This document shows, one piece after another, positions 12,138-62,392 of a DNA stretch of 64,000 bases. The notes below the pieces were generated by a model. It was not told where the DNA came from. It was given only the letters and a program-made list of their open reading frames with translations, and ran no database searches. Position 1 is the stretch's first letter, and each line of letters begins with the position of its first letter. The stretch is taken from the sequence record MK250027.1. One strand, given 5' to 3'. The translations under genes and the position numbers were made by a program.

Positions 12138-12154
12138 AATAAATATAAAAAGAA
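12138..12154 (+). promoter_or_regulatory. Putative late-promoter 17-mer AATAAATATAAAAAGAA (copy 1)
   Basis: Identical 17-mer lies 15-17 nt upstream of the ATGs at 12170, 18605 and 32025(-); contains TAAATA, resembling the T4 late consensus TATAAATA. Confidence 0.55.
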
Positions 12155-12169
12155 TTTTTATGAATATAA

Positions 12170-15100
12170 ATGGATAATAAATGTTCAAGACCTGCTTTGA
12201 TCCATAGCTTTAATCCTAAACCATTCAAAGATATTGATACAGCCATTTTCGCGCTTAATAAGAAAGATTTAGCAACAGGTGAAATAGCTATAGCATATTA
12301 TAATGATGTTAATGAAACAAGAGGAATCGGGGCAGTAATCGCAACTGGTAATATTTTACCAGGTGGAAATCAAATATTCAAGAATACTGTATATACTGAT
12401 AAACTTATAAAAGTTGTAAAAGAATCTATTGAATCTAACTCTGTTGATATAAGTGTAATCGAAGAAAATGTAAATAATAACATTGCAGATATTGCATTAA
12501 TTAAGGAACAACTTAAATCGTTGTCTATTGATTCAAGTAATAATCAATCTTCTGTTGATAATAAGATGAATGAAATCAATGAAATCATCAGTAAAATGAA
12601 AGAAGATATGAATAATATCATAGATAATATTCATAAAGTTGTTGCTGATGCATCATAGTCTCTCACTGATTCTACAGATACTATATATACCGATTTCAAA
12701 GGAGCAGACACTTCTTTAAAAAACTATATAGATGATGAAAACTTAAAAATTTCTCAAAAAATTGATGATATTTCATTAAAAAATGTAGAAAATAAGCAAG
12801 AATTATTAGATAAAATTAATTCCAATACATCTACTCGAAACTACAATTTATGATGTTTCAACATAGTTGACTGATGACATTTCTATATTAAACAATAAGG
12901 TAGAAACTTATAATAATGACTTAAATACATCTTTAACTTATAATGTGTCTACATTAAAATCTCTTATATCAGATAATAAGAATTATGTTGATAAAAGAGA
13001 AAATCTTATCAGAGAATATATTGATTAGAAAGATAATCAATTAATATGGCTAATAGGTGATACTTCTAAACATATTCATTTCCGTATAGATAAAGAAGTT
13101 CATGACTTAAATGATAGAATTACATCTGAACACCTTGATATGAATAAAGTTGTTGCAGATAATAAAACCGATTCAAAACGCTATACAGATTAGGAAATAT
13201 CATTAGCTAAAGATTATGTGGATGAACAAACTGAATATCTTAAATCAAATATATCTCAAACTGAGTTAAACTCAAAGAAATATACAGATGAATCTATTAC
13301 TTCATTAAATAATAAGTTATCAGAATCAATTAAGAATACGTCTATATATGCAAAAGATTTATTTGATAACTCTAATGAATATGCAGATAAATTAAATAAT
13401 TCATAGAAAGTTTATATTGATGATGAACTTAGAATGCAAGATGAACGTTTAGTTGACAATATAAATTCTGTAAAAGATACTATTAATACAACAAAATCTG
13501 AATTAAATGTTTCTATTAATAAATCATATGATAATGCAGTAAAATATACAAATAAAGTACATCAAGAGACTTTACAACTTATTAAAGAATATGATAATAA
13601 AGTAAGATAGGATTTTTCTGAAGCGGATATTAAGTTAGATAATAAGATTAATGACACTTCTACATTAATTTGGAATTATATAGGCAATACATCTGATGCT
13701 ATTGTTCAATTTGTTAAAGATACATCCAAATTAAATTGGGATCATACAAATGATACATCTGATGCTATTGTTAAATATATTAATGATACATCTGACGCTA
13801 TTGTTAAATATATAAATGATACTTCCGATGCTATTATTCAATATGTAGATTAGCAAGATCAATTATAGAAAAATTATACTGACAAAGAAGTATCTACTTT
13901 GAAATCATATGTAGATACAGAAAACACTTCTATTATTGCTTATGTTGATAATCAAGATGATAAAGTATTGAGTGAAGCCTCAATTTATACAGATGGTAAA
14001 ATTCAGGAAGTAAATAATACTATCCATGATCTTGATGAAAAGGTAGAAGATTATAATAGAAATACAAATAAGTTACTTGATGATGTTTCTGAAGGTATTA
14101 TAAGAGATTATACAACTGCAATTAATAATCTTAATCAAGATGTTTCCAGAAATGATACATGGTTATATAACCATATTGAAAAATATAATACAAATTTATC
14201 TACTGCAATTACAACTAATGATTCAGATACTAAAAAATTAATTAAAGATGTTTCCGATCTTCTTGATTAGAAAATAGAAGATACATCAGATATTCTGCAA
14301 GGTGTAATAGATGCATTGAAAACACAACATAATACTGATATTACAACGACAAATACTTCTATTATGTCTTATGTTAATAATTATAATACTAGTACATCAG
14401 AAATGATTAAAGCAATGAACACTAGTATTAATACATATTGGGAAAATGCCGATGAGACTATCGAAAATTTACTTACTAATGTTTCTAATGGTATTCTTCA
14501 AAAAGTTAATAATATACAAAAAGATTTATCTACTTATATTCAAACAGCCGAATCTACTTTAAAATCATTATATGAACAAGCAGATGACGGACTTCTTGGA
14601 TATATTAATAGTTAGGACGCAAAACTTAATAGTAGTATAAATGATATTTCAACAAAGATTGTAAATAAATTTAATAATGATATTAGTATATTAAATGATA
14701 AAGTTGATACTAATTTATCTAATTTAAATACATCTATTAATAGTGTTCATGATATATTATTTAGGAAAATTGAAGATACATCTACTGAAATTGTAAGAGC
14801 TTTGAATACATCTATTAGTAATATTAATCAAAAGCTTACTACTAATGTAACTGAAATTTATGATAGGATAGATGACGTTAAAGATGATATTTTTGAAAAA
14901 CTTAATGTATCTATTAATGGTATCAATAAAATATTAACTGATAAAGATACAGCATTAGATAATAAGATTGATAATAAGTATACAACTATTATTAATGTAA
15001 TGAATACATCTGATAGTATTTTAAATGGTCGTATTACTAATTTAGAAACCAAACATACAAATGAATTATCTGAAGCTGTTAAAACATTAAATAAATTAGT

Positions 15101-16745
15101 TTCAGATACAAAGACAGAATTATCTGGTCTAGATACAGCAAATAAAACAGAATTAATAACAAAATATGATAAGTTGACTTCTGATAATAAGCAAGCTATA
15201 TCTGATTTGAAAAAAGAATTAATCAATGTATCTAATGGTATCATTACAGATTATAAGAAATTATCTAAAGATACATCTACAATGTTAGATAATAAGATTG
15301 AAGATATTTCTACTAAGATTGTAACTGCATTGAATACATCTATCAGTAATGTATATGATGAATTAACTGGAAGCATTTCAACATTATCAAAAACCGTAAA
15401 AGATACATCAGAAAATATTGTTAATAAATTAAATACATCTATTAATAAAATATTCAGTGATTTATCAAAAGCAGATACATCTTTATCTACACGTATTGAT
15501 GATGCAAGTAATTTAATTCCTAAACCATAGACAGATGCAATTACTACAGTTGATTCACAGAAATATGTATGGAGTAACGGTAATGTAGCTTCTGAAAAAT
15601 GTGTTGTTGGTGCAGGTTAGACAAATATTGTAGTAAAAGATAATAAGGTACAGTTTGTATTAGGTGCATGGAATAATGGTGCAATAGGTTTACGTTTTAC
15701 AGAAATACCAGAAACAAATACAGTTGCAAATGGTCTTTTATCTGTTGATTCTAAATTGAAGTATGATAATTACGCAAATTAGATTACTACTATTAATTCA
15801 GATATTGCAAAGACAAATACTAATTTGACTTAGGAAATTAAAGATAGAACTAATGCAGATGATTCGTTATAGTTAAAGATTACTACTATTAATGAAACTA
15901 CAATACCTAATTTACATGAAGCAATATTAACAGAAATTTACAATAAGTATGATCCTGAAATTAACTCTATAAAAAAATCAATCAATACAACGTCTACTAC
16001 ATTACAAACTAATATTGATAATTTAAGAAAAGATGCATCTACTGAAGCAAAATCTAATCTTGATAAGTTAAATACTAGTATCAATAATAATGTATATACA
16101 CCGTTGAAAAACTTAATTACTGGTGAAATTAGTAGAGTTGAAACTGATTATAAAAATGCAGATAGTACATTAAAAAAAGCTATAGAACTTATTAATAATA
16201 CAACTATTGATTCTAAAGTTAATTCACTTAAATCTGAATTAACAAAGAAGTATGATAATGAAATTAGCACAGTAAAAAATACTATTACTAATAATCAGGA
16301 TAATATTATCAATACATAGTTACCTAATCTTAAGACAACAATAGAAACAGATTATAATAAGAAGTTTGAAACAGAATCAAATGAGCGTAAGACCACTGAT
16401 TCATAGTTAAGAACTGATATTGAATTGTTAAGTACGAAAGTAGATGGTATTAATACTAATATTGGTGATAACAATACTAATGTTACTAATTTACAAACAA
16501 CAATTAAAGAACTTCAAGCAACTATTATTGAGTTGAATTCACGTATATTAGCAGTTGAAGCATACGGAACAACAAATGTCGATTTTGCAAAACGTATTGA
16601 GACGCTTGAATCTAAATACAATAAGATCACAGCAATTGAAAGTGATATTACTGGTATTAAAGAGCGACTTGATAATATTGACACTGAACATGAAGAATTA
16701 TATTCAGGTGTTTAGGATTATAATGATTCTATTAATATTAGCTGA
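12170..16745 (+). CDS. Coiled-coil fibre-like protein, paralog 1 (about 1524 aa if a +1 frameshift near 12833 is corrected)
   Basis: Frame 2 runs from ATG 12170 to TGA 12851-12853; frame 3 is open from 12780 to TGA 16743-16745 with TAG read-through. N-terminal GEIAxAYY domain shared with the next two genes; [DN]xS and 11-aa repeats. Confidence 0.7.
13653..13850 (+). repeat. Six in-frame 33-bp tandem repeats (DTSDAIVKYIN type)
   Basis: Units such as gatacatctgatgctattgttaaatatattaat (13752) and gatacatctgacgctattgttaaatatataaat (13785). Confidence 0.85.
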
Positions 16746-16806: not shown

Positions 16807-16846
16807 TATTTTAGATAAATATTTAAAATATAAAGATTTAATATAT

Positions 16847-18505
16847 ATGAATGTTTACGATTCTCCACATATGCATGGAGTAAAACCACATCCATGTCCA
16901 CCTCCTCCTGGACCACATCATGATCCTTTTCATCATGTTCCTTGTTGTGAACCACCACATCATTGTTTACCTCCACATCATTGTGAACCACCATATGGAT
17001 TAATCAATCATTATAATAAAGTATGTTTCAAGAACTATGATGAAGCTGTATATAAATTAAAAATAAAATCATTACTTCCTGGCGAAATTGCATTCGCTTA
17101 TTATTTTGATAAGAATGCAGAATATGGTATTAACGCAATTGCAGCTGTTGGTTCTATTAAATTAGGAGCAACTAATATAATCTATGATAACGCTAATGAT
17201 ATTCAATCTCTTATTGAATCCCTTTCAACAAAGGTAGATTCAAATAATGAGAAATTTGAAACAATAGTAGATCAATTCGATGATATTAATAATGTTATTA
17301 AAGACATTAGTTCTCGTTTACATAAAGCTGAAGATAAAAATAATTCTTCTAATATTGATGCATCTATTTCAGATATAGATAATAAGATTGATACTATTAT
17401 TCAAGATAACGTATCAATACATGACCGTATTGATACCCTTGATTCACAAATGGATCAAGTAACTGATTATATTGCATAGCATGAATTAGATTATCAAGCA
17501 CTTGATGCATCAGTTAAACAACTTCGTGTTGATGTAGATTCATTAGGACTAGATGATAAACTTGATGAATTAGATAAGAAGATTAATCAAACAAAAGAAG
17601 ATATACTTCTTGAAACAAAGGCAGACAATGCATCATTAGAAGCTAAACTTACACAAGAATTTAACGGTAAATTACAAGATTATTCTGATTCATTAGATAA
17701 TCTTAAAGTTGAAATCACTCAACAGATTACAGATACAGTTGAACCTTTAAAAACGGATATTTATGATTTACAAGTTAAAACAACTGAATTGGAAACAAAT
17801 ATCGGTAAAGCAAAGGATGAAGCAGTTACTGCATCCAAAGAATATACAGATAATCAAATATCAGACAAGATGCAAGGAATTAATAGTTCACTTACTGATA
17901 TGTCTAATACTATTCATGATTTATCTGATTTAATTACCAATGTTTCTACTAATGCAGATAATGAACGTAAAGAATTAAAACGGTATATTGATTAGGTTAA
18001 GTCTGATATTGAAGGTGAAAATACTCAATTTAAATCTGAAGTAAATTCTGAAATTAATAAACAGAAACAATATATTACAGATACTATTAACGGATTTAAG
18101 GCAGAATATACTGCAACAACAGATAAAGCAATTGATGAAAAAGTAAAGGTTGTATCTGATAAATTAGATAATTATATCAATGAATCTACAACTAAACATT
18201 CTGAAATTGAAGCAAAGATTTCTACTATTAAAACGGATTTTGCAACATATAAAGGTGAGTTAAACGAAACTATTGCTAACAAAATTGCAGAACAAAATAC
18301 AAATATGAGAAATTATTTGGATAACGCAATTTCAACAGATAGATCATACTATGATTCACTTTATGCACGTAAAGATCAAATACCTGTAAATGTTGTATCA
18401 GGTGCAGGTGTTACGGTAGAAAACGGTGTTGTTAATCTTAATGTTGACAGTAATGGTGTATTAACAGTAGGTGGAAAACGTTATCAATTACAACAATTGA
18501 ATTAA
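16847..18505 (+). CDS. Coiled-coil fibre-like protein, paralog 2 (552 aa) with His/Pro/Cys-rich N-terminus
   Basis: Track ORFs 16847, 17789 and 18305 are in one frame joined by TAG; TAA at 18503. Contains LLPGEIAFAYY. Confidence 0.8.
16946..16996 (+). repeat. 18-bp tandem repeat encoding CxPPHH
   Basis: tgtgaaccaccacatcat tgtttacctccacatcat tgtgaaccaccatat. Confidence 0.8.
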
Positions 18506-18570: not shown

Positions 18571-18587
18571 AATAAATATAAAAAGAA
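18571..18587 (+). promoter_or_regulatory. Putative late-promoter 17-mer (copy 2)
   Basis: AATAAATATAAAAAGAA, identical to 12138-12154. Confidence 0.55.
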
Positions 18588-18604: not shown

Positions 18605-21600
18605 ATGGCAGGATTTATGGATAACAAATATGGTTCACATGTTCCACCTGTTGGACTTAATGGTTTCAATAAAATATGTTTTACTGATTAGAAAGAAGCT
18701 GAAACTATGTTATTGGATAAGCCGTTAATGCCTGGCTAACTCACATTCGCATATTACTATGATAATGTTGCGACTAATGGTGTAAATGTAATGGCAGCAG
18801 TCGGAACATTAAAAGGAGAAGGTTCAAACCATATTTTTGTTAGTTATGAAACTATAAATTAGTTAATTGATTCCATTGATGATTCATTTGAAGATTTCGA
18901 TACTAGTTTAATATATATTCGGAAAGAACTTATGAGCAAGCTTTCTGCTCTTGAAGATGAACAGAATAATTTAGTTTTACAGATAAGAGATAATGTTAAT
19001 AATTCTAATGTAAGTTTTAACGAAATTTATACTAAATTAGAAGAGTTAGAAACAAATGGTAAACAATATACAGATGAGAAAATTCAAGAGATAAGAGATT
19101 ATGTCGATACATCTGTAACAAGTAAAATCAATGATTATGAAACAGTAGTTTCTGATATGATTTTAGATGCGTCTACAAAATTAGATTAGATGCAAAAAGA
19201 TTTTGAAGATAAAGCTTAGGATATTCTTGATCGTAGTAATGAAGTATATGACAATCTTGATGTTTCTCTTCGTAATTATGTTAATAATGAAATGTTAGGA
19301 ATGCAACAGTTTGTTCATAACGAAACAACACAAGCCGTTTTAGATATGAATTCAAAATATGCGGTTTTAAAGAAAGTTGTTGCATCTATTAATTCATCTG
19401 TTAATGATATTGATAAAAAACATAATGATAAGGAAACAGAATTATCAAGAAATATTGTAGAAACAGCAACACAATTAACAGAAGACTTAGAAATTGCAAA
19501 TGTTTCAATCATTAGTTATATTGATCAATAGACATCATTATTCAATAAGAAGATTGATAATAAAATCAATGAGCTTGAATTTAATACAAAAACTAAAAAT
19601 ATAGATTTAACAAATATCGTAGAAGAATACCAACATTCAGTTAAGAATGATATTGCTGTATTCAATGCATCTATGAGAACATATGTTAAATCTAGTCTTG
19701 CCACAGTTCAAACAGATGCTAATTCAAAATATTCAGAATTAAAAACTTATGTAACATCAAATGATGCTTCATTATTAAATTATGTTAATGCAATGGAAAT
19801 TGCACAAAAGACATATATTAATAAACATGATTCTGAAATCAAATCTTGGATTGCAACATCAGATACTTCTTTATTCAATATTATTCGTTCAACAGATAGT
19901 AAATTAAAAGATGATCTTGACGCGATGGATGCAAGACACCAATCAATGTATCGTACAGTCGAATCACGTCTTGATAACCTTATTGATGATATTTCTACAG
20001 ATCTTACTATCATGGTTAATGAATACGGTAAGGAAGTTAAAAACTTTACACGTAAACATGTAAATGATTTAGAGAATAAAGTTAAAGCACAAAATGTAAG
20101 TTTAATTAACTATATTGATGATAAATCTCAAGAAGCAGTAAATGAAACTCGTTTACTTAATGCTTCACTTAGAACTCAATTAAAGAATACAACAAACTTA
20201 CTTAACGCAAGTATCAATAATGCTATTCAATATACAGATGATGAAATATCTAAATTAAAATCATATGTTGATACAGAAAATACTTCTATTATTACTTATG
20301 TTAATAATCAAGATGATAAAGTAAGATTCTATGCAGATTATGGAGATAATGAAGTTCGTAAATATATTGATGAACTTGAAGAGCAACTTAAGAAATATTC
20401 TATTACTGGTGATTCTTCTGTTATCAATTATATTAAGTTAACAAAAGAAAATATTGAACAATTTGTTAAAGATGCAGATGATGATGTTTTAAAGAAAGCA
20501 TATATTCATGATGATGAAATCAAAAATGAAATGACAACTGAATATAATGCATTTGTTCGTAAGCAGAAAGATATTGATGCATCATTATTAAATTATGTTA
20601 AGAATACAGATACTTCATTATTTAATTACATAAAGGATAGAGATGAACAAATAAAGAGATGGATTGCTATTGGTGATACTTCACTTTATAACTATTTCAA
20701 AACATAGAATGCATCTTTGTTTAATTATGTAAAAACATAGGATACAGAAATATAGAATAATCTTGTTAATAGTGTTTCTAAGATAGAAAATGATATGGCA
20801 AAATTCGAGACCAGTATCAATTCAAAGATTGATTCTGCTGATATTGCTCTTGATAATAAATTAAATGCTAATAATGCTTCTATCTATACAATTCTTTCTT
20901 CTAATGATGTATCAATCATGAGTGCAGTTAATAAGAAAGATTATGAACTTGAAACAAAATTAAATAATCAAATTTCAGAAGTAAAGAACGAATTAGAAAC
21001 AAAAGACTCTTCTATTCTTAATTATGTATTGAATGCTGATACATCTATTAAATCACAACTTAATATAATTAAAGATACTATTAATAATGATATTAAAGTA
21101 TCTCTTAAAGAACTTGATACAAAAGTGGATGTAAATGATGCTTCTATTATATCTTATATTAATACAAATGACCATAAGATTGGTTCTTATATTGATACAG
21201 AAATTAATCGTGTAGAAAATCATTGCAAATCAAATGATACATCTGTTGTTAATTTTGTAAAAAAAGAAGATTCATCTATAGTTAATTATGTAAATGGTAC
21301 AGTTAAACAAGAATTACTTGATAGAATTAATGATACAAATACATCTATTATTAATTATGTTGCTGAGAATTCATCATTGTTCAATTATGTCGTTAATAAT
21401 GATACTTTACTTAAAGCACTTATTGAAAGTAAAGATGGCTCAATTTTGAATTCATTAACAAGCGCTGATGCTTCTATTATTCGTTTAATTGAGAAATATA
21501 ACTCAGAATTACATAATAAGATTAACGCAAATGATTCATCTATTAACTCAAAAGTTGATAAGTATAATTCATCTACATTTAGCCACTTTACATTAAAAGA

Positions 21601-27010: not shown

Positions 27011-27011
27011 A

Positions 27012-28211: not shown

Positions 28212-28282
28212 TTCTCTAAAAATACGAAACTCGTTTTATTTTATATATGTATTTATTAGTATTGTTTATTTAATGTTAAAAA

Positions 28283-29665: not shown

Positions 29666-29737
29666 ATATTTTGTATTATATTGTTTATATTATTTATTTT
29701 TTGATAAATAAAGAAAAATATATTGATTATTTATATA

Positions 29738-32042: not shown

Positions 32043-32059
32043 TTCTTTTTATATTTATT
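32043..32059 (-). promoter_or_regulatory. Putative late-promoter 17-mer (copy 3)
   Basis: Plus strand ttctttttatatttatt is the reverse complement of AATAAATATAAAAAGAA. Confidence 0.55.
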
Positions 32060-38464: not shown

Positions 38465-38512
38465 ATTTTAAGTTTATTTAACTAAATATTTAATATATTT
38501 ATTTTTAGAATA

Positions 38513-38541
38513 TAGACTATATCATTATATTAATATATAAT
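38513..38541 (+). promoter_or_regulatory. sigma70-like promoter TAGACT-N17-TATAAT
   Basis: Exact 17-nt spacer upstream of ATG 38571; the same architecture occurs at 54586-54614 and 48897-48925. Confidence 0.65.
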
Positions 38542-39728: not shown

Positions 39729-40777
39729 TGATTAAAGATATATCACAAATAAAGGATAAATCTGTTAGTTTTATAAAGGAATTTATTAATAACTGTACGA
39801 TAGAAGAAAAAATAGATGCTCATTATGTCATTGTTGAGATAACATCTAAACAACATATTACTATTAAAAAAGCAAATGGAAAAGTAGTTGATAGAGTTGA
39901 TATGATATTAAACAATATGTGGAGTCAATTAGTCACTGATTGGAATTTTATTAAACTTGCTAATCAGGAGTTTTTTAACACACATATTGGATATAATATA
40001 TCGATGTTTTATTTTCCTAATAATAAGCCTTTACTGACAGAATATCCAGATAATATAAAATATCTTATAGATAGAATTACATATAATGACGAATTAATTA
40101 ATGTAGATTCATTTGTAAATAAATTGAAATTAAAAGATAAGTTCAATATTCATATTAAACATAATTTAACAAAGAATTTATCAAATGAAATAGATACCAT
40201 TAATAAAATTAACGGTGATAGAAAATCAGATATTAATTATAAGTTATTATTTCAAAATATAATTGATAGATCTACATTATTAGCAAAAGAGCCTGAAGGA
40301 TTTATTTATAAATGGAAAAAGAATCTTTATCAGTTAACATATTATGATAGAAAAAAAATAATTCCAGAAAAAACTCAATATGAATATTTGCTTTGTGATT
40401 TTGTATCTTATTGTAAGTCACATAATTATCAAGATAAGATTCATCATAGTTATGTAAAAACCGTATGTTCTTTATTCAATGATTATATAATTAATTGGGA
40501 AGAGGTAAATCATAATATTGAAAATAATATAGATATAAACAGTATTCAATCACCATCATTAGGAACGACTTTTGATATGGGATATGAATATATACCTGAT
40601 ATTATTACAATGAATTTATGCAAATCAAATGAATTATATAAAAGTATATTTAAAGTATTATTAGCGAACCTTCGTAGAGGAAAAGATAATAGTAAATGTA
40701 TATACATGAATAAGAAACAAGTTGATGATTGGAATATTATAATGAAAAATATTAAGATTAGAACTTTAACTATTTAA
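39728..40777 (+). CDS. Divergent nucleotidyltransferase / RNA-ligase-like protein
   Basis: IEEKIDA resembles ligase motif I (KxDG); PEGFIYK resembles motif IV (EGxVxK). Confidence 0.45.
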   Translation: MIKDISQIKDKSVSFIKEFINNCTIEEKIDAHYVIVEITSKQHITIKKANGKVVDRVDMILNNMWSQLVTDWNFIKLANQEFFNTHIGYNISMFYFPNNKPLLTEYPDNIKYLIDRITYNDELINVDSFVNKLKLKDKFNIHIKHNLTKNLSNEIDTINKINGDRKSDINYKLLFQNIIDRSTLLAKEPEGFIYKWKKNLYQLTYYDRKKIIPEKTQYEYLLCDFVSYCKSHNYQDKIHHSYVKTVCSLFNDYIINWEEVNHNIENNIDINSIQSPSLGTTFDMGYEYIPDIITMNLCKSNELYKSIFKVLLANLRRGKDNSKCIYMNKKQVDDWNIIMKNIKIRTLTI

Positions 40778-40810
40778 TAAATATATAAAGTTAAATATTT
40801 TTATAGAATT

Positions 40811-42784: not shown

Positions 42785-42795
42785 TACAAAGATAC
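42785..42795 (-). promoter_or_regulatory. Bacteroidota sigmaA-type -7 element GTATCTTTGTA
   Basis: Matches the TAnnTTTG consensus; the identical 11-mer occurs at six intergenic sites, each upstream of a minus-strand gene. Confidence 0.75.
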
Positions 42796-43930: not shown

Positions 43931-44019
43931 ATAAAATAAAAAAGTCTATTTATAATTATATAAAAATATACATAAGTTGTTTATTAATAAATATAATAAA
44001 TAAAAATAAACTAATTATC

Positions 44020-47503: not shown

Positions 47504-47514
47504 TACAAAGATAC
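47504..47514 (-). promoter_or_regulatory. Bacteroidota-type -7 element GTATCTTTGTA
   Basis: Identical 11-mer upstream of ATG 47469. Confidence 0.75.
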
Positions 47515-47578: not shown

Positions 47579-47587
47579 ATATTTTAA

Positions 47588-48115: not shown

Positions 48116-48149
48116 AGTATATTTTATAAAGATATTTTATTTTCAAAAT

Positions 48150-48890
48150 AATAAAAAATAAACATCAAAATTGTGGTTCTAAATCTTACTGCTACTTACT
48201 AAGACTACAATTTTGATGTTTATAAAAGCAATCATTCATTATCCTGCAGCATCCATATTAGTATAAGTTTCATTGCAATAGAACTTTACAACTATAGTGA
48301 TAATCCACTTATACATTCTTTTACTCTAAAGTCTTTTATATAACTTTATCATACATAATATATGTACTGTCCATCAATAAAAGGTTCTTTATTTCATCAT
48401 GGTTTTATATCGTATAAACAACCCTCTGTATATCACTGATTCATTTCTTTACATTTAGAAATCAGGGTCTTTAAGCCTCAACGTTTGGCTGTAACTATTA
48501 TCCTCAACCATTACCAGATAATGTCATCTTGTTTTTGTGGTGCATCTCACATACCTCCTTTAATCATAAAACAAGCAAAACTACTAAGACAAATAACGTT
48601 TCTTAGAACTTCTACGAATTTACGCTCATATCAAATCATCATCTGATATAGACACCTAAATTAAGTGAATAAAGTTTACGACTCAATATAAAATTTTATA
48701 TCTCAACCTTTATCAAAAATGATTCATTAAATTCTTTTAAGGAACTTATTTCTAATTAAATGAAGGATTCATTTAAAATAGGTTCTCCCGAAAACATGCG
48801 GTTTATCCTTACTCATTATAATTATAATAAGCGTTGTTTATAGCACTCATTAGAATTCATTATGTATTATCTAACTCTCATTTATAATAT
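48150..48890 (-). ncRNA. Large structured ncRNA candidate A (about 740 nt), family unassigned
   Basis: No ORF in the track; bounded by a TAGACA-N17-TATAAA promoter and a terminator; many stems (AAATGAA/TTCATTT, ATATCAGAT/ATTTGATAT, CTAAGA/TCTTAG, CTTGTTTT/AAAACAAG, CTGATT/AATCAG). Confidence 0.55.
48158..48223 (-). terminator. Terminator closing ncRNA candidate A
   Basis: 17-bp stem ATAAACATCAAAATTGT/ACAATTTTGATGTTTAT followed on the minus strand by a T tract. Confidence 0.75.
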
Positions 48891-48896
48891 TCATAA

Positions 48897-48925
48897 TTTA
48901 TATGATATTAAAAGCAAAATGTCTA
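48897..48925 (-). promoter_or_regulatory. sigma70-like promoter TAGACA-N17-TATAAA
   Basis: Plus strand tttata (48897-48902) and tgtcta (48920-48925), 17 nt apart. Confidence 0.6.
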
Positions 48926-49003
48926 ATATCATATTATAAATTATTTGTCTCGTTAGATATTATCAAAATTTCAAAGATCTCTTCATTGTTATTTTATTAA
49001 CAA

Positions 49004-49014
49004 TACAAAGATAC
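49004..49014 (-). promoter_or_regulatory. Bacteroidota-type -7 element GTATCTTTGTA
   Basis: Identical 11-mer, pointing toward ncRNA candidate A. Confidence 0.7.
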
Positions 49015-50839: not shown

Positions 50840-50850
50840 TACAAAGATAC
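50840..50850 (-). promoter_or_regulatory. Bacteroidota-type -7 element GTATCTTTGTA
   Basis: Identical 11-mer upstream of pseT. Confidence 0.75.
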
Positions 50851-53985: not shown

Positions 53986-54039
53986 ACATAATTATATGTT
54001 AAATAAAATAATTTCCAATATTATTATTCTTATTATATA

Positions 54040-54580: not shown

Positions 54581-54585
54581 TACTT

Positions 54586-54614
54586 ATTATATAATCAATA
54601 ATTTAAAAAGTCTA
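54586..54614 (-). promoter_or_regulatory. sigma70-like promoter TAGACT-N17-TATAAT
   Basis: Plus strand attata and agtcta 17 nt apart; a second copy TAGACT-N17-TATAAA at 54702-54730. Confidence 0.65.
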
Positions 54615-54756: not shown

Positions 54757-54933
54757 TTATTTTAAACAATATTCTAAATCAAATATAAAGTCTCCTAATA
54801 GTTCAATCTTTTTCCTAATAAGTTCTGATTCTAAATCAAATTTATGATCTATACAAAAATTTAATTCAATATATAACTTATCTCTATTAGATTTCCATTT
54901 ATCTATTAATTCTTTCTTTGTTAATTTTTCCAT
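54757..54933 (-). CDS. Small hypothetical protein (58 aa; absent from track)
   Basis: MEKLTKKELIDKWKSNRDKLY... to TAA; starts 1 nt after the upstream stop. Confidence 0.6.
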   Translation of the reverse strand: MEKLTKKELIDKWKSNRDKLYIELNFCIDHKFDLESELIRKKIELLGDFIFDLEYCLK

Positions 54934-54934
54934 C

Positions 54935-55459: not shown

Positions 55460-55604
55460 TTTCTCCCCATGGTAATTCACTATCTGGATCTATTACATCA
55501 CCACCATGATTACCATCTACATTAAAACCTGATTGAAAATTACTCATAATATTCATGTCAACAGGAATAACATTAATATTTGGTTTTATATAATTCTTTT
55601 TCAT
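55452..55604 (-). CDS. 50-aa peptide with MKKxYxKP leader-like motif (absent from track)
   Basis: MKKNYIKPNINVIPVDMNIMSNFQSGFNVDGNHGGDVIDPDSELPWGEND. Confidence 0.65.
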   Translation of the reverse strand: MKKNYIKPNINVIPVDMNIMSNFQSGFNVDGNHGGDVIDPDSELPWGEND

Positions 55605-55647
55605 ATTAAAATTCTTCAACTCGTTATTCAAATAATGTTTTCTAAAA

Positions 55648-55926
55648 TTATTTAACTGTTACTTTAATTTTAGATTCTGTTACCTTTCCATTAACTACAG
55701 TATTTATAGTATCAATAGAAATAGAATCCAAACTCTTAATGAATACATTAGGAATTTTTTCTATAGTAATTAAACTATCTCTATATTGAATAGAATCTTT
55801 ACTCAAATTAATTGTATCATGTATAGGTTCTTGATTCAAACTAGGAATATGTTTATTAATCCAAAAATATTGAACAGCAATACCAATAATAATTCCAATA
55901 ATAAATGTCCAAAAAATATGTTTCAT
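55648..55926 (-). CDS. Small protein with N-terminal membrane anchor
   Basis: MKHIFWTFIIGIIIGIAVQYFW hydrophobic start. Confidence 0.65.
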   Translation of the reverse strand: MKHIFWTFIIGIIIGIAVQYFWINKHIPSLNQEPIHDTINLSKDSIQYRDSLITIEKIPNVFIKSLDSISIDTINTVVNGKVTESKIKVTVK

Positions 55927-55950
55927 TTTTCTATATTATTTAAAATAAAA

Positions 55951-56157
55951 TTAAACTTTTAAATTAACTAAATCTTTATACTTTATTTCTTTATACTTTG
56001 TTTTATTAATAGATATAAAAATAGGCTTATCAGTATAACTTTTATAATAATTTAACGATTCGTCTTTACTAATAAACCACTTTGTTTCTTTATCTAAAAT
56101 TTTTCCAGATAAACTTCTTCCTAATCCTATCCGAATAATAATATTATTTTTCAACAT
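55951..56157 (-). CDS. Hypothetical protein
   Basis: 68-aa ORF next to the gap; start uncertain. Confidence 0.45.
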   Translation of the reverse strand: MLKNNIIIRIGLGRSLSGKILDKETKWFISKDESLNYYKSYTDKPIFISINKTKYKEIKYKDLVNLKV

Positions 56158-56199
56158 AATTAAAAATAATTTTTCAAAAAGAAATTTATAAATTAATTA

Positions 56200-56632
56200 N
56201 NNNNNNNNNNNNNNNNNNNNNNNNNNNNNNNNNNNNNNNNNNNNNNNNNNNNNNNNNNNNNNNNNNNNNNNNNNNNNNNNNNNNNNNNNNNNNNNNNNNN
56301 NNNNNNNNNNNNNNNNNNNNNNNNNNNNNNNNNNNNNNNNNNNNNNNNNNNNNNNNNNNNNNNNNNNNNNNNNNNNNNNNNNNNNNNNNNNNNNNNNNNN
56401 NNNNNNNNNNNNNNNNNNNNNNNNNNNNNNNNNNNNNNNNNNNNNNNNNNNNNNNNNNNNNNNNNNNNNNNNNNNNNNNNNNNNNNNNNNNNNNNNNNNN
56501 NNNNNNNNNNNNNNNNNNNNNNNNNNNNNNNNNNNNNNNNNNNNNNNNNNNNNNNNNNNNNNNNNNNNNNNNNNNNNNNNNNNNNNNNNNNNNNNNNNNN
56601 NNNNNNNNNNNNNNNNNNNNNNNNNNNNNNNN
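56200..56632. other. Assembly gap (run of N)
   Basis: About 430 N characters. Confidence 0.98.
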
Positions 56633-56651
56633 NTTTATAATTTGTTGTAAA

Positions 56652-57374
56652 TCAATTCTTTAACTTATTTACTGTATTATTAAATACATTATTAAACTCT
56701 TCTTCTGTTATATAAGACATCTTTTCATCTAAACGTTCATCCAATACGTCTTTAATATCGACTGATTCTCTTTTAATCATGAAATAATCAGATCCGTCTA
56801 ACCATGATTTTACTAATACTCTTGTAATATCTAAATTACCTTGATAATCTTTATCTATACCATGAATCTTTACATACTCATATACAGGTATAAATTTATC
56901 TGATATTTTTTCATCTTTTTCTTTATCAGATAAATTTTGTGTTTCTAAATCATCAATGAATTTAGTGAATAATGTTTTATTAAATTCTATACGAGTTGTT
57001 CTGTTCTTTAAATATGATACAGGTAAAATCGGTACTTCTGTTGTAATGGGGAAATCATCACTTAAAGGACATATTTGTTCTACAACCCAAACGATATATT
57101 CATTATTAACATTGAATTTATTTAGATTATATGTTTGTCGTTTATCATGACTTAAATTCCACACTTTATCAGAATAAGGAATGACCGCAATATATGTTTC
57201 ATTAAAAATATCTTTTCCTAATTGTTCAGATGTAACTTTACATTTATTTGATTCATCATCTCTATGATAATTGATACAATATAATTTTACTCCATCAGGA
57301 ATTAAGATTTTATTTTCACATGATTCATATGCAAATCTCCAAATCTTATATTCTTTATATTTTGCTTTACTCAT
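56652..57374 (-). CDS. Hypothetical protein
   Basis: Intact 240-aa ORF. Confidence 0.75.
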   Translation of the reverse strand: MSKAKYKEYKIWRFAYESCENKILIPDGVKLYCINYHRDDESNKCKVTSEQLGKDIFNETYIAVIPYSDKVWNLSHDKRQTYNLNKFNVNNEYIVWVVEQICPLSDDFPITTEVPILPVSYLKNRTTRIEFNKTLFTKFIDDLETQNLSDKEKDEKISDKFIPVYEYVKIHGIDKDYQGNLDITRVLVKSWLDGSDYFMIKRESVDIKDVLDERLDEKMSYITEEEFNNVFNNTVNKLKN

Positions 57375-59882: not shown

Positions 59883-59893
59883 TACAAAGATAC
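59883..59893 (-). promoter_or_regulatory. Bacteroidota-type -7 element GTATCTTTGTA
   Basis: Identical 11-mer upstream of ATG 59854. Confidence 0.75.
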
Positions 59894-59968: not shown

Positions 59969-61135
59969 TTATGCATATAAATATATTTTTTTCATTTCTT
60001 TACCAGAAGGTGTTGTAAATGTTATAACTGCATATTTTCTTTCAAATCCATCCCATTCGCATTCCATATCTTCACCTCTGCCATTATAACGGTCCGCATC
60101 ATCAAGGTCTCGTTTTAAATCAAGCTTTGCTTTCCAATTAGGCTTCTTTGTTGATTGAATTGATTTTTTATATTCAATACATTTTTTTGAATTATGTGCA
60201 AGCAATCTTAAATCAAACCTATCAAATATGCGAGATCGTTTTCCTGACACTCTTTCATCTGAAATATCCATTATATCTAATGGTTTACATTTCAATGTAT
60301 TCTGAATATATTTATTCAATGATAGGAATTCTTTACATGGTTTAGAAATATACTTAATGGAATCAACCCATGGTTTATCATCATTATTACTTAGCCAACT
60401 ACTATATGGTTTATGAATACCATCAATACGTGTGTAGTTAGGTAAATCTATTTTATACAATTTATATGTATAAATATCTTCCATTAATCCATCAATATCA
60501 CCATTTGGATAATATTTTTCTAATATATTTTCATTATCATAATAAAAATTATTAATATTAATATCGATAATAGGAAACTTTTCAGTTTTTTTATTTGCTA
60601 TATATTTCTTTAATAGTTTTGAAATAACTTCTTGCTTATTATTTGATGATGATGAAGTATTTCTTGAAGATGATGTACCTCTTAATGTTCCAGATAATAC
60701 ACGTTCACTTGCATTTACACCAAACTCTTGTAATGTAATATTTGAACCAATAAGTTTATTAATCCATCTAACAATTTCATTCGCTGATATAGGATTTACT
60801 CTAAATACTTTTGTAAATGCTTCTATTGTAGCATCTGTACGCTTTGGTATTTTTGCTTCTGTTTCACCTACAAATGTATAAATCAATTTTGGATTTCCAA
60901 AAGACATAAGCTTACATTTTCTTCCTTGTTTAATAATACGAAGAACATAAGATTGATTTGTTGGTGTATATACCATATACAAATAATATACAGGATAACC
61001 TGTGGTTCCATTTGATTTTAATTTTACAAGATTACATCTATAATATGCTCCATCAGCAGAAGCAATATTTTCAAATGCAAATTTAACTGCTTGCTTTTCT
61101 GTTGTATCTAAAGATTCAAATAATTTATTAATCAT
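59969..61135 (-). CDS. Hypothetical protein (388 aa, two-domain with Ser/Asn linker)
   Basis: Intact ORF. Confidence 0.75.
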   Translation of the reverse strand: MINKLFESLDTTEKQAVKFAFENIASADGAYYRCNLVKLKSNGTTGYPVYYLYMVYTPTNQSYVLRIIKQGRKCKLMSFGNPKLIYTFVGETEAKIPKRTDATIEAFTKVFRVNPISANEIVRWINKLIGSNITLQEFGVNASERVLSGTLRGTSSSRNTSSSSNNKQEVISKLLKKYIANKKTEKFPIIDININNFYYDNENILEKYYPNGDIDGLMEDIYTYKLYKIDLPNYTRIDGIHKPYSSWLSNNDDKPWVDSIKYISKPCKEFLSLNKYIQNTLKCKPLDIMDISDERVSGKRSRIFDRFDLRLLAHNSKKCIEYKKSIQSTKKPNWKAKLDLKRDLDDADRYNGRGEDMECEWDGFERKYAVITFTTPSGKEMKKIYLYA

Positions 61136-61186
61136 TATATTATTAAAATTATTTAAGTTTAATATAATATATTTATATCTAATTAA

Positions 61187-62347
61187 TTACCATCTATGAT
61201 AACGTTTTCTATATGAATAATTACCAGATGGATTATTTTCTGTATAATCATTTGTAATTACCCAATATGAAATTCCAACATTATATAGTAACATAATAAT
61301 AAGAATAGCAATATACCATCCTGTACTTAATTCTATATTAATATAATTAAAATCAGAAAATTCTTTCCTATTCCAATTTGTATCAATTTGTGTATCTAAC
61401 CATTCAGCATATTCTTTAAAATTAATGGTAGGATGATTAATGAAATAATCACGTGTTTTTACTTCAAGCAAAGGTTTATCACACCATGAAAATGGATTAC
61501 ACCAAATAATTTTATTATTCTTTATACCAAGACATACAATAAACTCGTTCTTATTTCCACCTTGCCAATATGCCTTTTGCATTTCTGATATTTCTATGTT
61601 AGATGTATTGTAACAACATATCAATACATGAATTTGATTCTTTGGACCTCTGTAGCCATTCAAATACCTAACAGCGTCAATATCAGATTCATTTGCGTTA
61701 TATCCAATTATTGGATTCTGATCATATAACTTAGTTTCAGGATATTCATATAAACCATTTTCTTTTGCATCTTCTTTACTTATATTAGAATATTTAAAGA
61801 TAGAATATGAAGATGCTTTTACTTTATTCTGATACATATGTGTCCATGTTACAGGATATGAATTCTCTCTTGTTCTATTCCAATATGTAATATATGCATC
61901 TCCATCTTCTAAATGATAATTTCTATGCATATCTTTAAATACTGGTTGCGTATTTAATTTTTTACATATATACTGATAATCTTTTTTAGATATTGATTCT
62001 TTATCTCCATGTATTGTTTCATAAATATATTCAGCAGGATGGTATCTTCGTTCAGGTACTGTATATGTTACGGTTCGTGTTTTACCGTTACCACATGAAA
62101 CAGTTCTAGTATGTGTTACCATAACTATTTCATCCCATGGTTCATAATATGTTACTTTACTTATTAAATCACTTAAATATTCTGTGTCTAATGATGATAT
62201 ATATACAAATGAATATTTAAGGCCAAGAAATAATAATAATGATGGTACAGCTACAATAAAATATTCCCATATTGCAGTTTGCTTACGAAATTTCCATGCT
62301 AATATTATTATTGTAATAATAGGTATTAAAAAAATTATTATTTCCAT
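61187..62347 (-). CDS. Membrane protein (two N-terminal TM, one C-terminal TM)
   Basis: Hydrophobic termini flanking a soluble domain. Confidence 0.75.
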   Translation of the reverse strand: MEIIIFLIPIITIIILAWKFRKQTAIWEYFIVAVPSLLLFLGLKYSFVYISSLDTEYLSDLISKVTYYEPWDEIVMVTHTRTVSCGNGKTRTVTYTVPERRYHPAEYIYETIHGDKESISKKDYQYICKKLNTQPVFKDMHRNYHLEDGDAYITYWNRTRENSYPVTWTHMYQNKVKASSYSIFKYSNISKEDAKENGLYEYPETKLYDQNPIIGYNANESDIDAVRYLNGYRGPKNQIHVLICCYNTSNIEISEMQKAYWQGGNKNEFIVCLGIKNNKIIWCNPFSWCDKPLLEVKTRDYFINHPTINFKEYAEWLDTQIDTNWNRKEFSDFNYINIELSTGWYIAILIIMLLYNVGISYWVITNDYTENNPSGNYSYRKRYHRW

Positions 62348-62381
62348 ATATTATTATTTTATTTAAAATTAAAAATTATGT

Positions 62382-62392
62382 TACAAAGATAC
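62382..62392 (-). promoter_or_regulatory. Bacteroidota-type -7 element GTATCTTTGTA
   Basis: Identical 11-mer upstream of ATG 62347. Confidence 0.75.

What the first reader, a model, noticed from the sequence alone, without database searches (positions are those of the whole stretch)
12138..62392. Codon usage tracks promoter class: TAG-free genes behind host-type promoters, TAG genes behind (A/T)ATAAATA
Seen: the five protein operons directly behind GTATCTTTGTA and the TAGACT-N17-TATAAT operon at 38571 contain no in-frame TAG. TAG-containing genes at 12170, 16847, 18605, 28211, 29665, 29738, 32025, 38464, 40811, 43930 and 44020 have (A/T/G)ATAAATA shortly upstream. One counterexample is 59969-61135, which has TATAAATA but no TAG. 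Known: TATAAATA is the T4 gp55 late promoter, and recoding has been proposed to time late-gene translation. Inference: a two-layer (transcription plus code) late switch is readable gene by gene.
Basis: partly seen in the sequence, partly recalled or inferred. Interest (0 to 1): 0.7.

Follow-up and report, generated by a model that had tools for sequence, protein, structure and literature searches.

The report
Promoter class predicts amber-codon use
In this 552-kb gut megaphage (Prevotella phage Lak-B8), genes behind a host-like promoter almost never contain the recoded stop codon TAG, while genes behind a T4-style late promoter are full of it; this ties the phage's genetic-code switch to its transcription programme, though only from sequence, with no expression data.

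Summary
The window is Prevotella phage Lak-B8 (MK250027.1), positions 434001-498000, a TAG-recoded megaphage. All 11 listed TAG genes have (A/G/T)ATAAATA ending 16-38 nt before their ATG. All six GTATCTTTGTA copies are intergenic, and the units behind them are TAG-free.

Genome-wide figures:
- An unbiased k-mer contrast recovers the same two motifs.
- ATAAATA sits 12-45 nt upstream of 91/158 TAG-containing operon leaders against 29/205 TAG-free ones. Dinucleotide shuffles expect about 21 in each class.
- It outranks the other 20 orderings of A5T2; only words overlapping it come near.
- 58 early sites match a position weight matrix (0 in the control).
- In-frame TAG is 0.95 per 1000 codons behind early promoters and 11.9 behind late ones. 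Out-of-frame TAG and GC are equal.
- The result replicates in Lak-A2, and both motifs are phylogenetic footprints.

A gp55-like late sigma gene exists outside the window and itself carries three in-frame TAGs.

- GTATCTTTGTA fits the Bacteroidetes TAnnTTTG box.
- TAGAC-N17-TATAAT is a third class and is not host-type for Prevotella.
- "Gene by gene" is overstated: about 58% sensitivity.

No RNA data exist. The code-timing idea and T4-type late promoters are both known; the link between them appears new.

The parts
42785..42795 (-). Early-class promoter core GTATCTTTGTA (-7 box TAtcTTTG). Heads the TAG-free operon 42276-42761, 41418-42272, 41126-41407.
   Evidence: also present in Lak-A2
47504..47514 (-). 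Early-class promoter core. Heads the TAG-free operon 46780-47469, 46139-46777, 45642-46142 (DSP-like phosphatase, weak match) and 44969-45649 (ClpP).
49004..49014 (-). Early-class promoter core followed by a unit with no protein gene (48116-49003).
48116..49003 (-). Candidate early non-coding RNA. 875 nt with no ORF longer than 41 aa, ending in a strong hairpin plus T-run.
   Evidence: fold z = -4.7; no Rfam or tRNA hit
50840..50850 (-). Early-class promoter core. Heads the TAG-free operon 49880-50821 (polynucleotide kinase/phosphatase) and 49066-49866.
59883..59893 (-). Early-class promoter core. Heads a TAG-free run of about 10 genes from 59854 down to 54757, which contains the masked gap.
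62382..62392 (-). Early-class promoter core. Heads the TAG-free gene 61187-62347.
56200..56633 (.). Masked or unread stretch inside the early operon. Its flanks are contiguous and no called ORF crosses it.
38513..38541 (+). Third-class promoter TAGACT-N17-TATAAT. Heads the TAG-free operon 38571-40777.
   Evidence: both hexamers conserved and the spacer diverged in Lak-A2
54586..54614 (-). Second third-class site, TAGACT-N17-TATAAT, followed by about 1.07 kb without a convincing ORF (53519-54585).
12138..12145 (+). Late-class motif AATAAATA, 24 nt before the ATG of 12170-12853 (1 TAG). The unit continues into the ORF ending at 16745 (19 TAGs; start called at 12783, uncertain).
16814..16821 (+). 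Late-class motif GATAAATA, 25 nt before 16847-18505 (2 TAGs).
18571..18578 (+). Late-class motif AATAAATA, 26 nt before the small ORF 18605-18739 (1 TAG). The unit continues into 18791-26605 (2604 aa, 19 TAGs).
28250..28257 (-). Late-class motif AATAAATA, 38 nt before 27012-28211 (1 TAG), followed by 26663-27028 (1 TAG).
29691..29710 (.). Back-to-back divergent late motifs: AATAAATA(-) 25 nt before 28283-29665 (5 TAGs), and GATAAATA(+) 27 nt before 29738-30160 (2 TAGs).
32052..32059 (-). Late-class motif AATAAATA, 26 nt before 30187-32025 (12 TAGs).
38496..38503 (-). Late-class motif AATAAATA, 31 nt before 38105-38464 (1 TAG). The unit continues into 32112-38081 (1989 aa, 36 TAGs).
   Evidence: conserved in Lak-A2
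40776..40783 (+). Late-class motif AATAAATA, 27 nt before 40811-41077 (1 TAG). It lies directly after the TAG-free operon.
   Evidence: a 26-nt block around it is fully conserved in Lak-A2 while the flanks diverge
43947..44002 (.). Divergent late motifs: TATAAATA(-) 16 nt before 43262-43930 (2 TAGs), and two AATAAATA(+) 26 and 17 nt before 44020-44922 (6 TAGs).
61170..61177 (-). Late-type motif TATAAATA, 34 nt before the TAG-free gene 59969-61135 (388 aa).
   Evidence: P of zero TAG is about 0.01 at the late-class rate
1..12074 (+). TAG-rich late unit. A 1570-aa gene starts upstream of the window and has 15 TAGs in all, 10 of them inside the window; then 3384-12074 (2896 aa, 38 TAGs). The leader motif lies at Lak-B8 about 432.6 kb, 27 nt before that gene's ATG.
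   Evidence: no family hits

Best explanation
The window is part of a T4-like, TAG-recoded megaphage (Lak-B8). Its transcription signals fall into discrete classes, and these coincide with the code its genes need.

Early class. The consensus is a T-run (TTTTTTTATTT), about 12 nt, then TGTATCTTTGTA, with roughly 58 sites in the genome. It has the geometry and the -7 box (TAnnTTTG) of Bacteroidetes primary-sigma promoters. It is most likely read by unmodified host RNA polymerase at the start of infection. Genes behind it can be translated with the host's standard code because they avoid in-frame TAG. They include a release-factor-2 homologue, two sigma-70-family factors, tRNA arrays, ClpP and a polynucleotide kinase/phosphatase.

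Late class. The consensus is (A>G>T, never C)ATAAATA-N4-AA, with no upstream element, ending about 20-30 nt before the start codon. It has the sequence and layout of the T4 late promoter (TATAAATA at -13 to -6). It is most likely read by host core polymerase carrying the phage's gp55-like sigma. Genes behind it use TAG for about a third of the glutamine-type codons (CAA, CAG, TAG), so they cannot be completed until the phage's amber suppressor tRNA(CTA) is active.

Late proteins are thus gated twice, by promoter and by code.

Shown: the motifs, their positions, their conservation, the frame-specific TAG partition, and the presence of the gp55-like, RF2 and tRNA(CTA) genes.
Inferred: which polymerase or sigma reads each class, and the order in time.
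For: Early class.
- GTATCTTTGTA occurs 41 times against 1 for the reversed control, and 40 of 41 copies are intergenic.
- The position weight matrix finds 58 sites and 0 in reversed sequence.
- Only 2 of 56 first genes behind a site carry a TAG, each within the last 4 codons.

Late class.
- An unbiased k-mer contrast gives AATAAATA in 55/120 upstream regions of TAG>=2 genes against 14/205 for TAG-free genes.
- The motif end peaks 20-29 nt before the ATG: 65 of 113 occurrences.
- Two extra conserved A's follow it, the second being the 6th nt after the motif, where T4 starts transcription (PMC1524935).
- There is no upstream conservation, as in T4 (PMC2988020).

Partition.
- Early units: 217 genes, 39 TAGs in 40,982 codons. 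Late units: 278 genes, 1197 TAGs in 100,516 codons.
- Out-of-frame TAG is equal (21.6 vs 24.2 and 14.1 vs 15.0 per 1000 codons) and GC is equal (0.271 vs 0.270).
- Composition-matched and shuffle controls agree.
- It replicates in 400 kb of Lak-A2, p 5e-15.
- Footprints against Lak-A2: ATAAATA is 94-98% identical per position against 65-82% for the ten bases either side; TGTATCTTTG is 96-100% against 57-89% for its near flanks (single loci).

Machinery.
- gp55-like gene at Lak-B8 405195-405581: phrog_234 4e-11, 29% identity to T4 gp55 at E 3e-7, and the only PDB hit is 7d7c_F.
- RF2 homologue: TAG-free and second gene of an early operon.
- tRNA(CTA) at 415017-415089.
- Iyer 2021 places Lak-B8 among T4-like jumbo phages that lack their own polymerase and carry sigma factors (PMC7824862).
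Against: - No transcript data exist for any Lak phage in the runs on offer, so start sites and timing are unproven.
- 42% of TAG-containing leaders lack a perfect motif. 88 genes could not be assigned to a class, and these run at 6.9 TAG per 1000 codons.
- 30 late-motif leaders are TAG-free where 14.5 are expected.
- The gp23-like capsid gene has only one TAG, at codon 11.
- T4's co-activator gp33 and sliding clamp gp45 were not detected with their PHROG profiles.
- The early core is far more invariant than host promoters need to be, which could mean a phage factor reads it.
- The -33 TTTG of the host consensus appears only as a T-run.
- Gene calls come from my own simple caller. Some starts are wrong: 16 of 49 single-TAG genes carry the TAG in the first 12 codons, where 4.1 are expected.
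Confidence: 0.68

Rival explanations
1. ATAAATA is not a promoter. It is a 5'-leader signal of post-switch genes, for example a translation-initiation enhancer or an RNA-processing site, and transcription starts elsewhere.
For: The motif keeps a tight distance to the start codon, with its end 20-29 nt upstream in 65 of 113 cases. Bacteroidetes mRNAs lack strong Shine-Dalgarno sites (own knowledge). No 5'-end data exist.
Against: It is found at operon leaders and hardly ever before internal genes: 3 of 55 TAG+ genes with a gap under 25 nt. It often lies just after a terminator hairpin and T-run. It matches the T4 late promoter in sequence, in its lack of an upstream element and in the conserved A's where T4 starts transcription. 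The matching gp55-like sigma is encoded.
Confidence: 0.1
2. The TGTATCTTTG class is not read by the host primary sigma. One of the two phage sigma-70-family factors reads it, so it is a phage-specific (middle) class and the true immediate-early promoters are something else.
For: The 10-mer is essentially invariant in 57 of 58 sites, including the two 'nn' positions of TAnnTTTG that the host consensus leaves free. Lak-B8 encodes two sigma-70-family proteins. 122 TAG-free leaders have no assigned motif.
Against: At least one of the phage sigma genes (341178-342113) lies in a unit headed by this motif, at 340024, so something else must read it first. The core fits TAnnTTTG, and the T-run lies where the -33 element would be. 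RF2 and tRNA arrays, which are needed early, are behind it.
Confidence: 0.17
3. The correlation reflects module ancestry rather than timing. TAG-free blocks would be accessory cassettes that spread with their own promoter, and TAG-rich blocks the old core. Promoter class and TAG use would then be inherited together without any functional coupling.
For: TAG-free units carry typical accessory genes such as ClpP, a phosphatase, PNKP, DUF488 and a PDEase-like protein. Lak-A2 has an extra gene inserted behind one early promoter. The early promoter plus its leader is nearly identical at many sites.
Against: GC content and out-of-frame TAG frequency are the same in both classes, so only the reading frame is purged of TAG. 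The code-switch machinery itself (RF2, sigma factors, tRNAs) is in the TAG-free class. Both motif classes are conserved as footprints between Lak clades.
Confidence: 0.06

Closest known systems
Bacteriophage T4 late transcription (TATAAATA promoters read by gp55, with gp33 and the gp45 sliding clamp)
   Same: An 8-bp A/T box with a variable first base. No -35 element. A conserved A where T4 starts transcription. Sites on both strands, often divergent. A gp55-family protein is encoded.
   Different: The first base is mostly A (68%), with G allowed and C never. The Lak gp55-like protein has 128 aa against 185. gp33 and gp45 homologues were not detected. The host is a Bacteroidetes. The genes behind the promoter need a changed genetic code.
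Stop-codon recoding as a timer of late or lytic genes (Borges et al., bioRxiv 10.1101/2021.08.26.457843; Devoto et al. 2019, PMC6784885)
   Same: Lak phages read TAG as sense. They carry tRNA(CTA) and RF2. Structural regions use TAG, and a share of genes stays compatible with the standard code.
   Different: Those papers argue from gene function and genome maps. The word 'promoter' does not occur in either. Here the split is tied to two sequence-defined transcription classes and to a frame-specific depletion, and the late sigma gene itself is found to need suppression.
Bacteroidetes primary-sigma promoters (-33 TTTG / -7 TAnnTTTG)
   Same: The early core contains TAtcTTTG. A T-rich element lies 24 nt upstream of the TA, the place of the -33 box.
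   Different: The phage version is a near-invariant 10-12-mer with fixed 'nn' = TC. The upstream element is a T-run without a conserved G. Recognition by host polymerase is not tested.
Early/middle/late promoter cascades of T4-like jumbo phages that carry several sigma factors (group 2 of Iyer et al. 2021, PMC7824862)
   Same: No phage RNA polymerase is reported. The phage has a minimal sigma plus RpoD-like sigmas. There are three promoter-like classes.
   Different: A third class, TAGAC-N17-19-TA(T/A)AAT, precedes tRNAs and ORF-free regions, and may be where the suppressor tRNAs are transcribed. That link is not described for any T4-like phage to my knowledge.

Membership tests
T4-type late promoter | 8-bp box TATAAATA, with the first base variable in relatives | tested here: met
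   Consensus from 91 sites: first base A 62, G 16, T 13, C 0, followed by ATAAATA (the seven bases used to select the sites). An unbiased k-mer search recovers it. Reference: PMC1524935.
T4-type late promoter | No conserved -35 element | tested here: met
   Information content is at most 0.65 bit at every position from -30 to -2 relative to the motif. Reference: PMC2988020.
T4-type late promoter | Transcription starts 6 nt downstream of the box | not testable with these tools
   Only indirect support: conserved A's at the 5th and 6th nt after the box (IC 1.4 and 1.2), kept at 90% between Lak-B8 and Lak-A2. No RNA runs are available.
T4-type late promoter | Lies upstream of late (virion) genes | tested here: inconclusive
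   The window's giant TAG-rich proteins give only weak tape-measure-like hits. The gp23-like capsid gene has ATAAATA 54 nt upstream. Most Lak proteins have no known function.
T4-type late promoter | Cognate factors gp55, gp33 and the gp45 clamp are encoded | tested here: inconclusive
   gp55-like found at E 6.4e-10. gp33 (phrog_254) gives only E 0.018 inside a 609-aa ORF, and gp45 (phrog_223) gives no match. Iyer 2021 reports gp33 orthologues for the group.
gp55 family of late sigma factors | Sequence match to the family, including the region-2-like core | tested here: met
   phrog_234 is the best family at 4e-11. BLASTP against T4 gp55 gives 29% over 107 aa, E 3e-7. The only PDB match is 7d7c_F gp55, E 0.014. 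The shared motif NP(F/H)AY(Y/I)T is also present in more distant relatives. Pfam Sigma70_r2 scores 20 bits, below its cut-off.
gp55 family of late sigma factors | C-terminal sliding-clamp-binding tail | tested here: inconclusive
   T4 gp55 ends ...SLDFLYEAND. The Lak protein ends ...SLDNNIHSF. This is a resemblance seen by eye only.
Bacteroidetes sigma-A promoter | -7 box TAnnTTTG | tested here: met
   TAtcTTTG occurs in 57 of 58 matrix sites. Consensus taken from PMC7366714.
Bacteroidetes sigma-A promoter | -33 box TTTG at the right spacing | tested here: inconclusive
   A conserved T-run starts 24 nt upstream of the TA. It is 93-100% conserved against Lak-A2, but the G is not conserved.
Bacteroidetes sigma-A promoter | Read by host holoenzyme | not testable with these tools
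   This needs in vitro transcription or a reporter in Prevotella.
TAG-recoded phage with standard-code early genes (Borges model) | In-frame TAG in long conserved ORFs, a suppressor tRNA(CTA), an RF2 gene, and a TAG-free gene set | tested here: met
   ORFs of 1989-2896 aa appear only when TAG is read as sense. tRNA(CTA) is present and conserved in Lak-A2. RF2 is found at 7e-32 and is TAG-free. 370 of 583 genes are TAG-free.
Sigma-70-type -35/-10 promoter (third class) | Two hexamers 17-19 nt apart, enriched between genes | tested here: met
   TAGAC-N17-19-TATAAT: 17 of 20 copies are intergenic, against 0 of 6 and 1 of 9 for two control patterns. At 38513 both hexamers are kept and the spacer diverged in Lak-A2. 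Which sigma reads it is unknown.

The most novel reading that the evidence does not exclude
The two layers are wired in series rather than in parallel. The gp55-like late sigma gene carries three in-frame TAGs in every Lak genome examined, so it cannot be made until amber suppression is on. The cascade would run in four steps:
1. Host sigma-A reads the TGTATCTTTG promoters, giving TAG-free early genes that include RF2 and phage sigma-70-like factors.
2. A third promoter class, TAGAC-N17-TATAAT, perhaps read by a phage sigma-70-like factor, transcribes the suppressor tRNAs.
3. The late sigma is translated.
4. AATAAATA promoters fire.
A change of genetic code would then be the master timer of a transcription programme.
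Probability: 0.3. Interest if true: 0.8.

Novelty: new variant of a known kind. Interest (0 to 1): 0.6.

Why it matters
The idea that phages use stop-codon recoding to delay late proteins rests so far on gene annotations in genomes where most genes have no known function. Here promoter class, read from DNA alone, independently sorts the genes into the same two sets. The depletion of TAG in the early set is specific to the reading frame.

This gives the hypothesis a sequence-level test that it passes. It also supplies about 58 early and about 120 late promoter candidates for an uncultured 552-kb phage. And it raises a sharper question: why gate late genes twice, and which gate comes first?

The TAG codons inside the late sigma gene make that question testable with a few purified components. 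On the practical side, the motifs can improve gene calling and class prediction in recoded T4-like megaphages.

Tried and rejected
- RNA evidence.
- Rfam on the whole window, and permissively on 47900-49100, found nothing above threshold. ARAGORN, with and without introns, found no tRNA in the window.
- gp33 and gp45 profiles gave no convincing match in Lak-B8.
- I searched for a further motif in the 179 unassigned leaders. AACAAAT and ATAAAGTA are orientation-biased but have no consistent position, so I did not accept them as a class.
- Idea: early genes use TAG as their real stop. TAG within the last 12 codons is not enriched (5 observed, 4.1 expected), so I dropped it.
- Idea: conservation of the three TAGs in the sigma gene proves selection. 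At 88.6% nucleotide identity, nine unchanged bases are expected with probability about 0.34, so this is weak evidence only.
- The ATAAATA 27 nt before the sigma gene in Lak-B8 sits in a terminator-hairpin loop and is absent from Lak-A2 and Lak-C1. I do not count it as that gene's promoter.
- The TAGAC site 1.2 kb upstream of tRNA(CTA) is not conserved in Lak-A2, although another TAGAC site about 120 nt further upstream is. The promoter of the suppressor tRNA stays open.
- PHROG and Pfam scans of the window's TAG-rich proteins gave almost nothing.
- Structure prediction of the gp55-like protein was not attempted, because proteins from record-handle loci are not accepted by that tool.
- Paralogue search for the two ORF-free stretches found nothing meaningful.

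Full report
**What the window is.** The window has 20-32% GC. Under the standard code it is broken into many short ORFs. When TAG is read as sense it resolves into giant ORFs: 2896, 2604 and 1989 aa with 38, 19 and 36 in-frame TAGs. Window 38000-48000 is 100% identical to Prevotella phage Lak-B8, MK250027.1, at 472000-482000. Motif positions fix the offset at +434000. Lak phages are uncultured megaphages of about 550 kb that read TAG as an amino acid and carry tRNA(CTA) and RF2 (PMC6784885). Borges et al. proposed that such recoding delays late and lytic proteins (10.1101/2021.08.26.457843). Neither paper mentions promoters.

- For genome-wide work I joined the public record outside the window to the window itself, so the N run stayed in place.
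- When I used Lak-A2, I first located the homologues of the gap's flanks (99.8-100.5 kb and 101.0-102.4 kb). I then fetched only 120001-520000.
- The flanks are 550 nt apart in the window and in nine Lak-B records. The two sides are therefore contiguous and the estimated length is right.
- No called ORF crosses the gap. Gene 56652-57374(-) stops 18 nt to its right, and gene 55951-56157(-) starts 43 nt to its left.
- All three minus-strand frames close within four codons of the left edge. The gap can hide at most a small ORF or a signal inside the early operon that starts at 59893.

**Checking the observation in the window.**
- All six GTATCTTTGTA copies are on the minus strand and intergenic.
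- Five copies head operons without any in-frame TAG. The sixth heads 875 nt without an ORF.
- The operon 38571-40777, behind TAGACT-N17-TATAAT, is TAG-free.
- Each of the 11 named TAG genes begins with ATG, contains 1-12 TAGs, and has (A/G/T)ATAAATA ending 16-38 nt upstream.
- The counterexample 59969-61135 is as described.
These are 3384-12074, the ORF ending at 16745, 18791-26605 and 32112-38081.

**Is it more than chance?** I called genes on the whole 551,627-bp genome with a simple hexamer caller that reads TAG as sense. This gave 583 genes, of which 370 have no TAG.
AATAAATA occurs in 55/120 against 14/205. TATCTTTG occurs in 0/120 against 44/205.
- Among genes with an upstream gap of at least 25 nt, ATAAATA ends 12-45 nt before the start in 91/158 TAG-containing genes and 29/205 TAG-free genes. 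The odds ratio is 8.2 and p is 1.6e-18.
- Of the 21 orderings of five A's and two T's, ATAAATA ranks first by far. The next two are overlapping shifts of it. Words that do not overlap it stay at odds ratios of about 0.5-2.5.
- Dinucleotide-preserving shuffles expect 20.8 +/- 4.1 and 20.6 +/- 4.0 for the two classes. The motif is therefore at chance level before TAG-free genes and 4.4-fold enriched before TAG genes.
- A position weight matrix built from the 41 exact early sites finds 58 sites, and none in reversed sequence.

I then assigned every gene to the nearest upstream promoter on its strand.

| Class | Genes | Codons | In-frame TAGs | TAG per 1000 codons | Genes with a TAG |
|---|---|---|---|---|---|
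| Early | 217 | 40,982 | 39 | 0.95 | 9% |
| Late | 278 | 100,516 | 1197 | 11.9 | 60% |

Fisher's test on genes with and without TAG gives p 3e-33. The contrast is specific to the reading frame. TAG in the +1 frame is 21.6 against 24.2 per 1000 codons, and in the +2 frame 14.1 against 15.0. GC is 0.271 against 0.270. Base composition and gene length therefore do not explain it.

**Independent support from a relative.** In 400 kb of Lak-A2, which is 77-89% identical to Lak-B8 where aligned, the same tables hold.
- The late motif precedes 63/114 TAG+ leaders against 17/153 TAG-free leaders (p 5e-15).
- The early motif precedes 34/153 TAG-free leaders against 2/114 TAG+ leaders.
- Across 51 orthologous late sites, each base of ATAAATA is 94-98% identical, while the ten bases on either side run at 65-82%. 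The two A's further downstream run at 90%.
- Across 28 early sites, TGTATCTTTG is 96-100% identical against 57-89% for its near flanks. The upstream T-run is 93-100% identical.
- Single-locus alignments in the window show the same at 38496, 38513 and 40776.

**What the signals look like.** The early consensus is TTTTTTTATTT, about 12 nt, then (A/G)TGTATCTTTGTA and a conserved leader, usually 30-60 nt before the ATG.
- It contains TAtcTTTG, an instance of the Bacteroidetes sigma-A -7 box TAnnTTTG. The T-run lies where the -33 TTTG would be (PMC7366714).

The late consensus is (A 68%, G 18%, T 14%, C 0%)ATAAATA-N4-AA with no conserved upstream element. Its end lies 20-29 nt before the ATG in 65 of 113 cases, and it often comes directly after a terminator hairpin.
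- T4's late promoter is TATAAATA at -13 to -6. The first base varies between A and T in T4 relatives, and there is no -35 element (PMC1524935, PMC2988020).
- The second conserved A in Lak is the sixth base after the box, which is the T4 start position.

A six-frame profile search of Lak-B8 with the T4 gp55 family (phrog_234) gives one hit, at 405246-405494 with E 6.4e-10, containing three TAGs.
- Read with TAG as Gln, the 128-aa protein has phrog_234 as its best family (4e-11).
- It aligns to T4 gp55 at 29% identity over 107 aa (E 3e-7).
- Its only match among 177,635 PDB sequences is gp55 in the T4 late transcription complex, 7d7c_F.
- Lak-B8 also encodes two sigma-70-family proteins. One, of 311 aa, is TAG-free and lies in an early-class unit. 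The other, of 337 aa, has no internal TAG, only one 8 codons before its stop. Its transcription class is unclear, because my assignment puts it behind a late-type motif.
- There is an RF2 homologue that is TAG-free and is the second gene of an early operon.
- tRNA arrays lie behind early promoters.
- gp33 and the gp45 clamp were not detected. Iyer et al. place Lak-B8 in the T4-like jumbo group, which has sigma factors and no polymerase of its own (PMC7824862).

The gp55-like gene needs amber suppression itself. Its three TAGs are present in Lak-A2, Lak-C1 and seven IMG/VR Lak contigs.
- This suggests the code switch acts upstream of the late transcription switch.
- The evidence is thin. The Lak copies are close relatives, and nine unchanged bases are expected about one time in three.
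- The promoter of the sigma gene is unclear, and so is that of tRNA(CTA).

**Corrections and limits.**
- TAGAC-N17-19-TATAAT is a real third class, but it is not host-type for a Bacteroidetes host. 17 of 20 copies are intergenic, against 0 of 6 and 1 of 9 for control patterns.
- Some copies precede tRNA-Glu by 40 nt, a tRNA array, tRNA(TTA), or ORF-free stretches, including window 54586-54614.
- The rule is statistical, not gene by gene. 42% of TAG+ leaders lack a perfect motif, and 88 genes are unassigned.
- 30 of 124 late-motif leaders are TAG-free, where 14.5 are expected.
- My gene starts are sometimes wrong.
- No RNA data exist. Who reads which promoter, and when, is inference.

**Functions in the window.** The TAG-free units encode ClpP (44969-45649), a phosphatase-like protein (weak match, below the Pfam cut-off), a polynucleotide kinase/phosphatase (49880-50821), a DUF488 protein and a weak, sub-threshold phosphodiesterase-like match. 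The TAG-rich giants give only weak tape-measure-like hits.

**Verdict.** Both ingredients were known: T4-type late promoters, and recoding as a late-gene timer. I found no description of their coincidence, of the Lak promoter classes, or of the TAG-dependent late sigma gene in the literature searched.

Noticed in passing
window 48116-49003 (-): A complete unit with an early promoter (49004-49014), 875 nt with no ORF longer than 41 aa, and a strong terminator hairpin plus T-run. The fold z-score is -4.7. There is no Rfam or tRNA match. It is a candidate early non-coding RNA of unknown kind.
   Followed up: partly
window 53519-54614 (-): A TAGACT-N17-TATAAT site (54586-54614) is followed by about 1.07 kb without a convincing ORF, tRNA or Rfam hit, before gene 53138-53518.
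   Followed up: partly
Lak-B8 about 94.9, 222.5, 336.2-337.8, 385.3-385.5 and 545.3-545.6 kb (outside the window): A repeated intergenic cassette, mostly as pairs of TAGAC-N17-TA(T/A)AAT sites about 215-310 nt apart, with similar downstream sequence (aaatactggtattttgag... and aaatatgttagtatttaagg...). No gene lies within 120 nt. It may be a family of small RNA genes.
   Followed up: no
Lak-B8 405195-405581 (+) (L019:15195-15581): The gp55-like late sigma gene has three in-frame TAGs, kept in all Lak copies seen. Its C-terminus ...SLDNNIHSF resembles the clamp-binding tail ...SLDFLYEAND of T4 gp55 by eye.
   Followed up: partly
Lak-B8 414232-415089 (+): The amber suppressor tRNA(CTA) lies 24 nt after an ORF with 8 in-frame TAGs. 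By eye its translation looks like a GIY-YIG homing endonuclease. Both are conserved in Lak-A2, with a paired change in the tRNA's anticodon stem.
   Followed up: partly
Lak-B8 54828-56831 (-): The gp23-like major capsid gene (PF07068, 2.4e-19) has a single TAG, at codon 11, and none in the following 656 codons. Several other long genes with a late motif have no TAG at all (854, 647, 638, 605 and 551 aa).
   Followed up: partly
whole genome: the 112 late-class leaders whose start is fixed by a motif 18-35 nt upstream: TAG is somewhat biased to the 5' end. Density is 15-21 per 1000 codons in the first 26 codons against 10.6 beyond codon 200. The median relative position of the first TAG is 0.089 against 0.140 expected (p 0.003). 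44 of the 112 genes have a TAG within the first 25 codons.
   Followed up: partly
Lak-B8 346509-346581 (+): A tRNA with anticodon TTA, which would read the stop codon TAA, lies 322 nt after a TAGAC-type site and 620 nt after an early promoter. TAA is the main stop codon of this genome (198 of 217 early-class genes).
   Followed up: no
window 29691-29710, 38496-38541 and 43947-44002: Promoter motifs sit back to back in short divergent intergenic regions: late/late, late/third-class and late/late. T4 likewise has late promoters on both strands.
   Followed up: no
window 51214-51909 (-) and 53138-53518 (-): Two genes in an otherwise TAG-free block have one TAG among their first few codons if the upstream start is used. 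For 51909 this is an ATG that overlaps the previous gene's stop by 4 nt; for 53518 it is a GTG. If a downstream GTG is the start, neither has a TAG. The starts are unresolved.
   Followed up: partly
window 52752-53093 (+): My caller picked a 113-aa ORF with 6 TAGs antisense to 52498-52902(-). It is probably spurious, and shows that reading TAG as sense inflates antisense ORFs.
   Followed up: no
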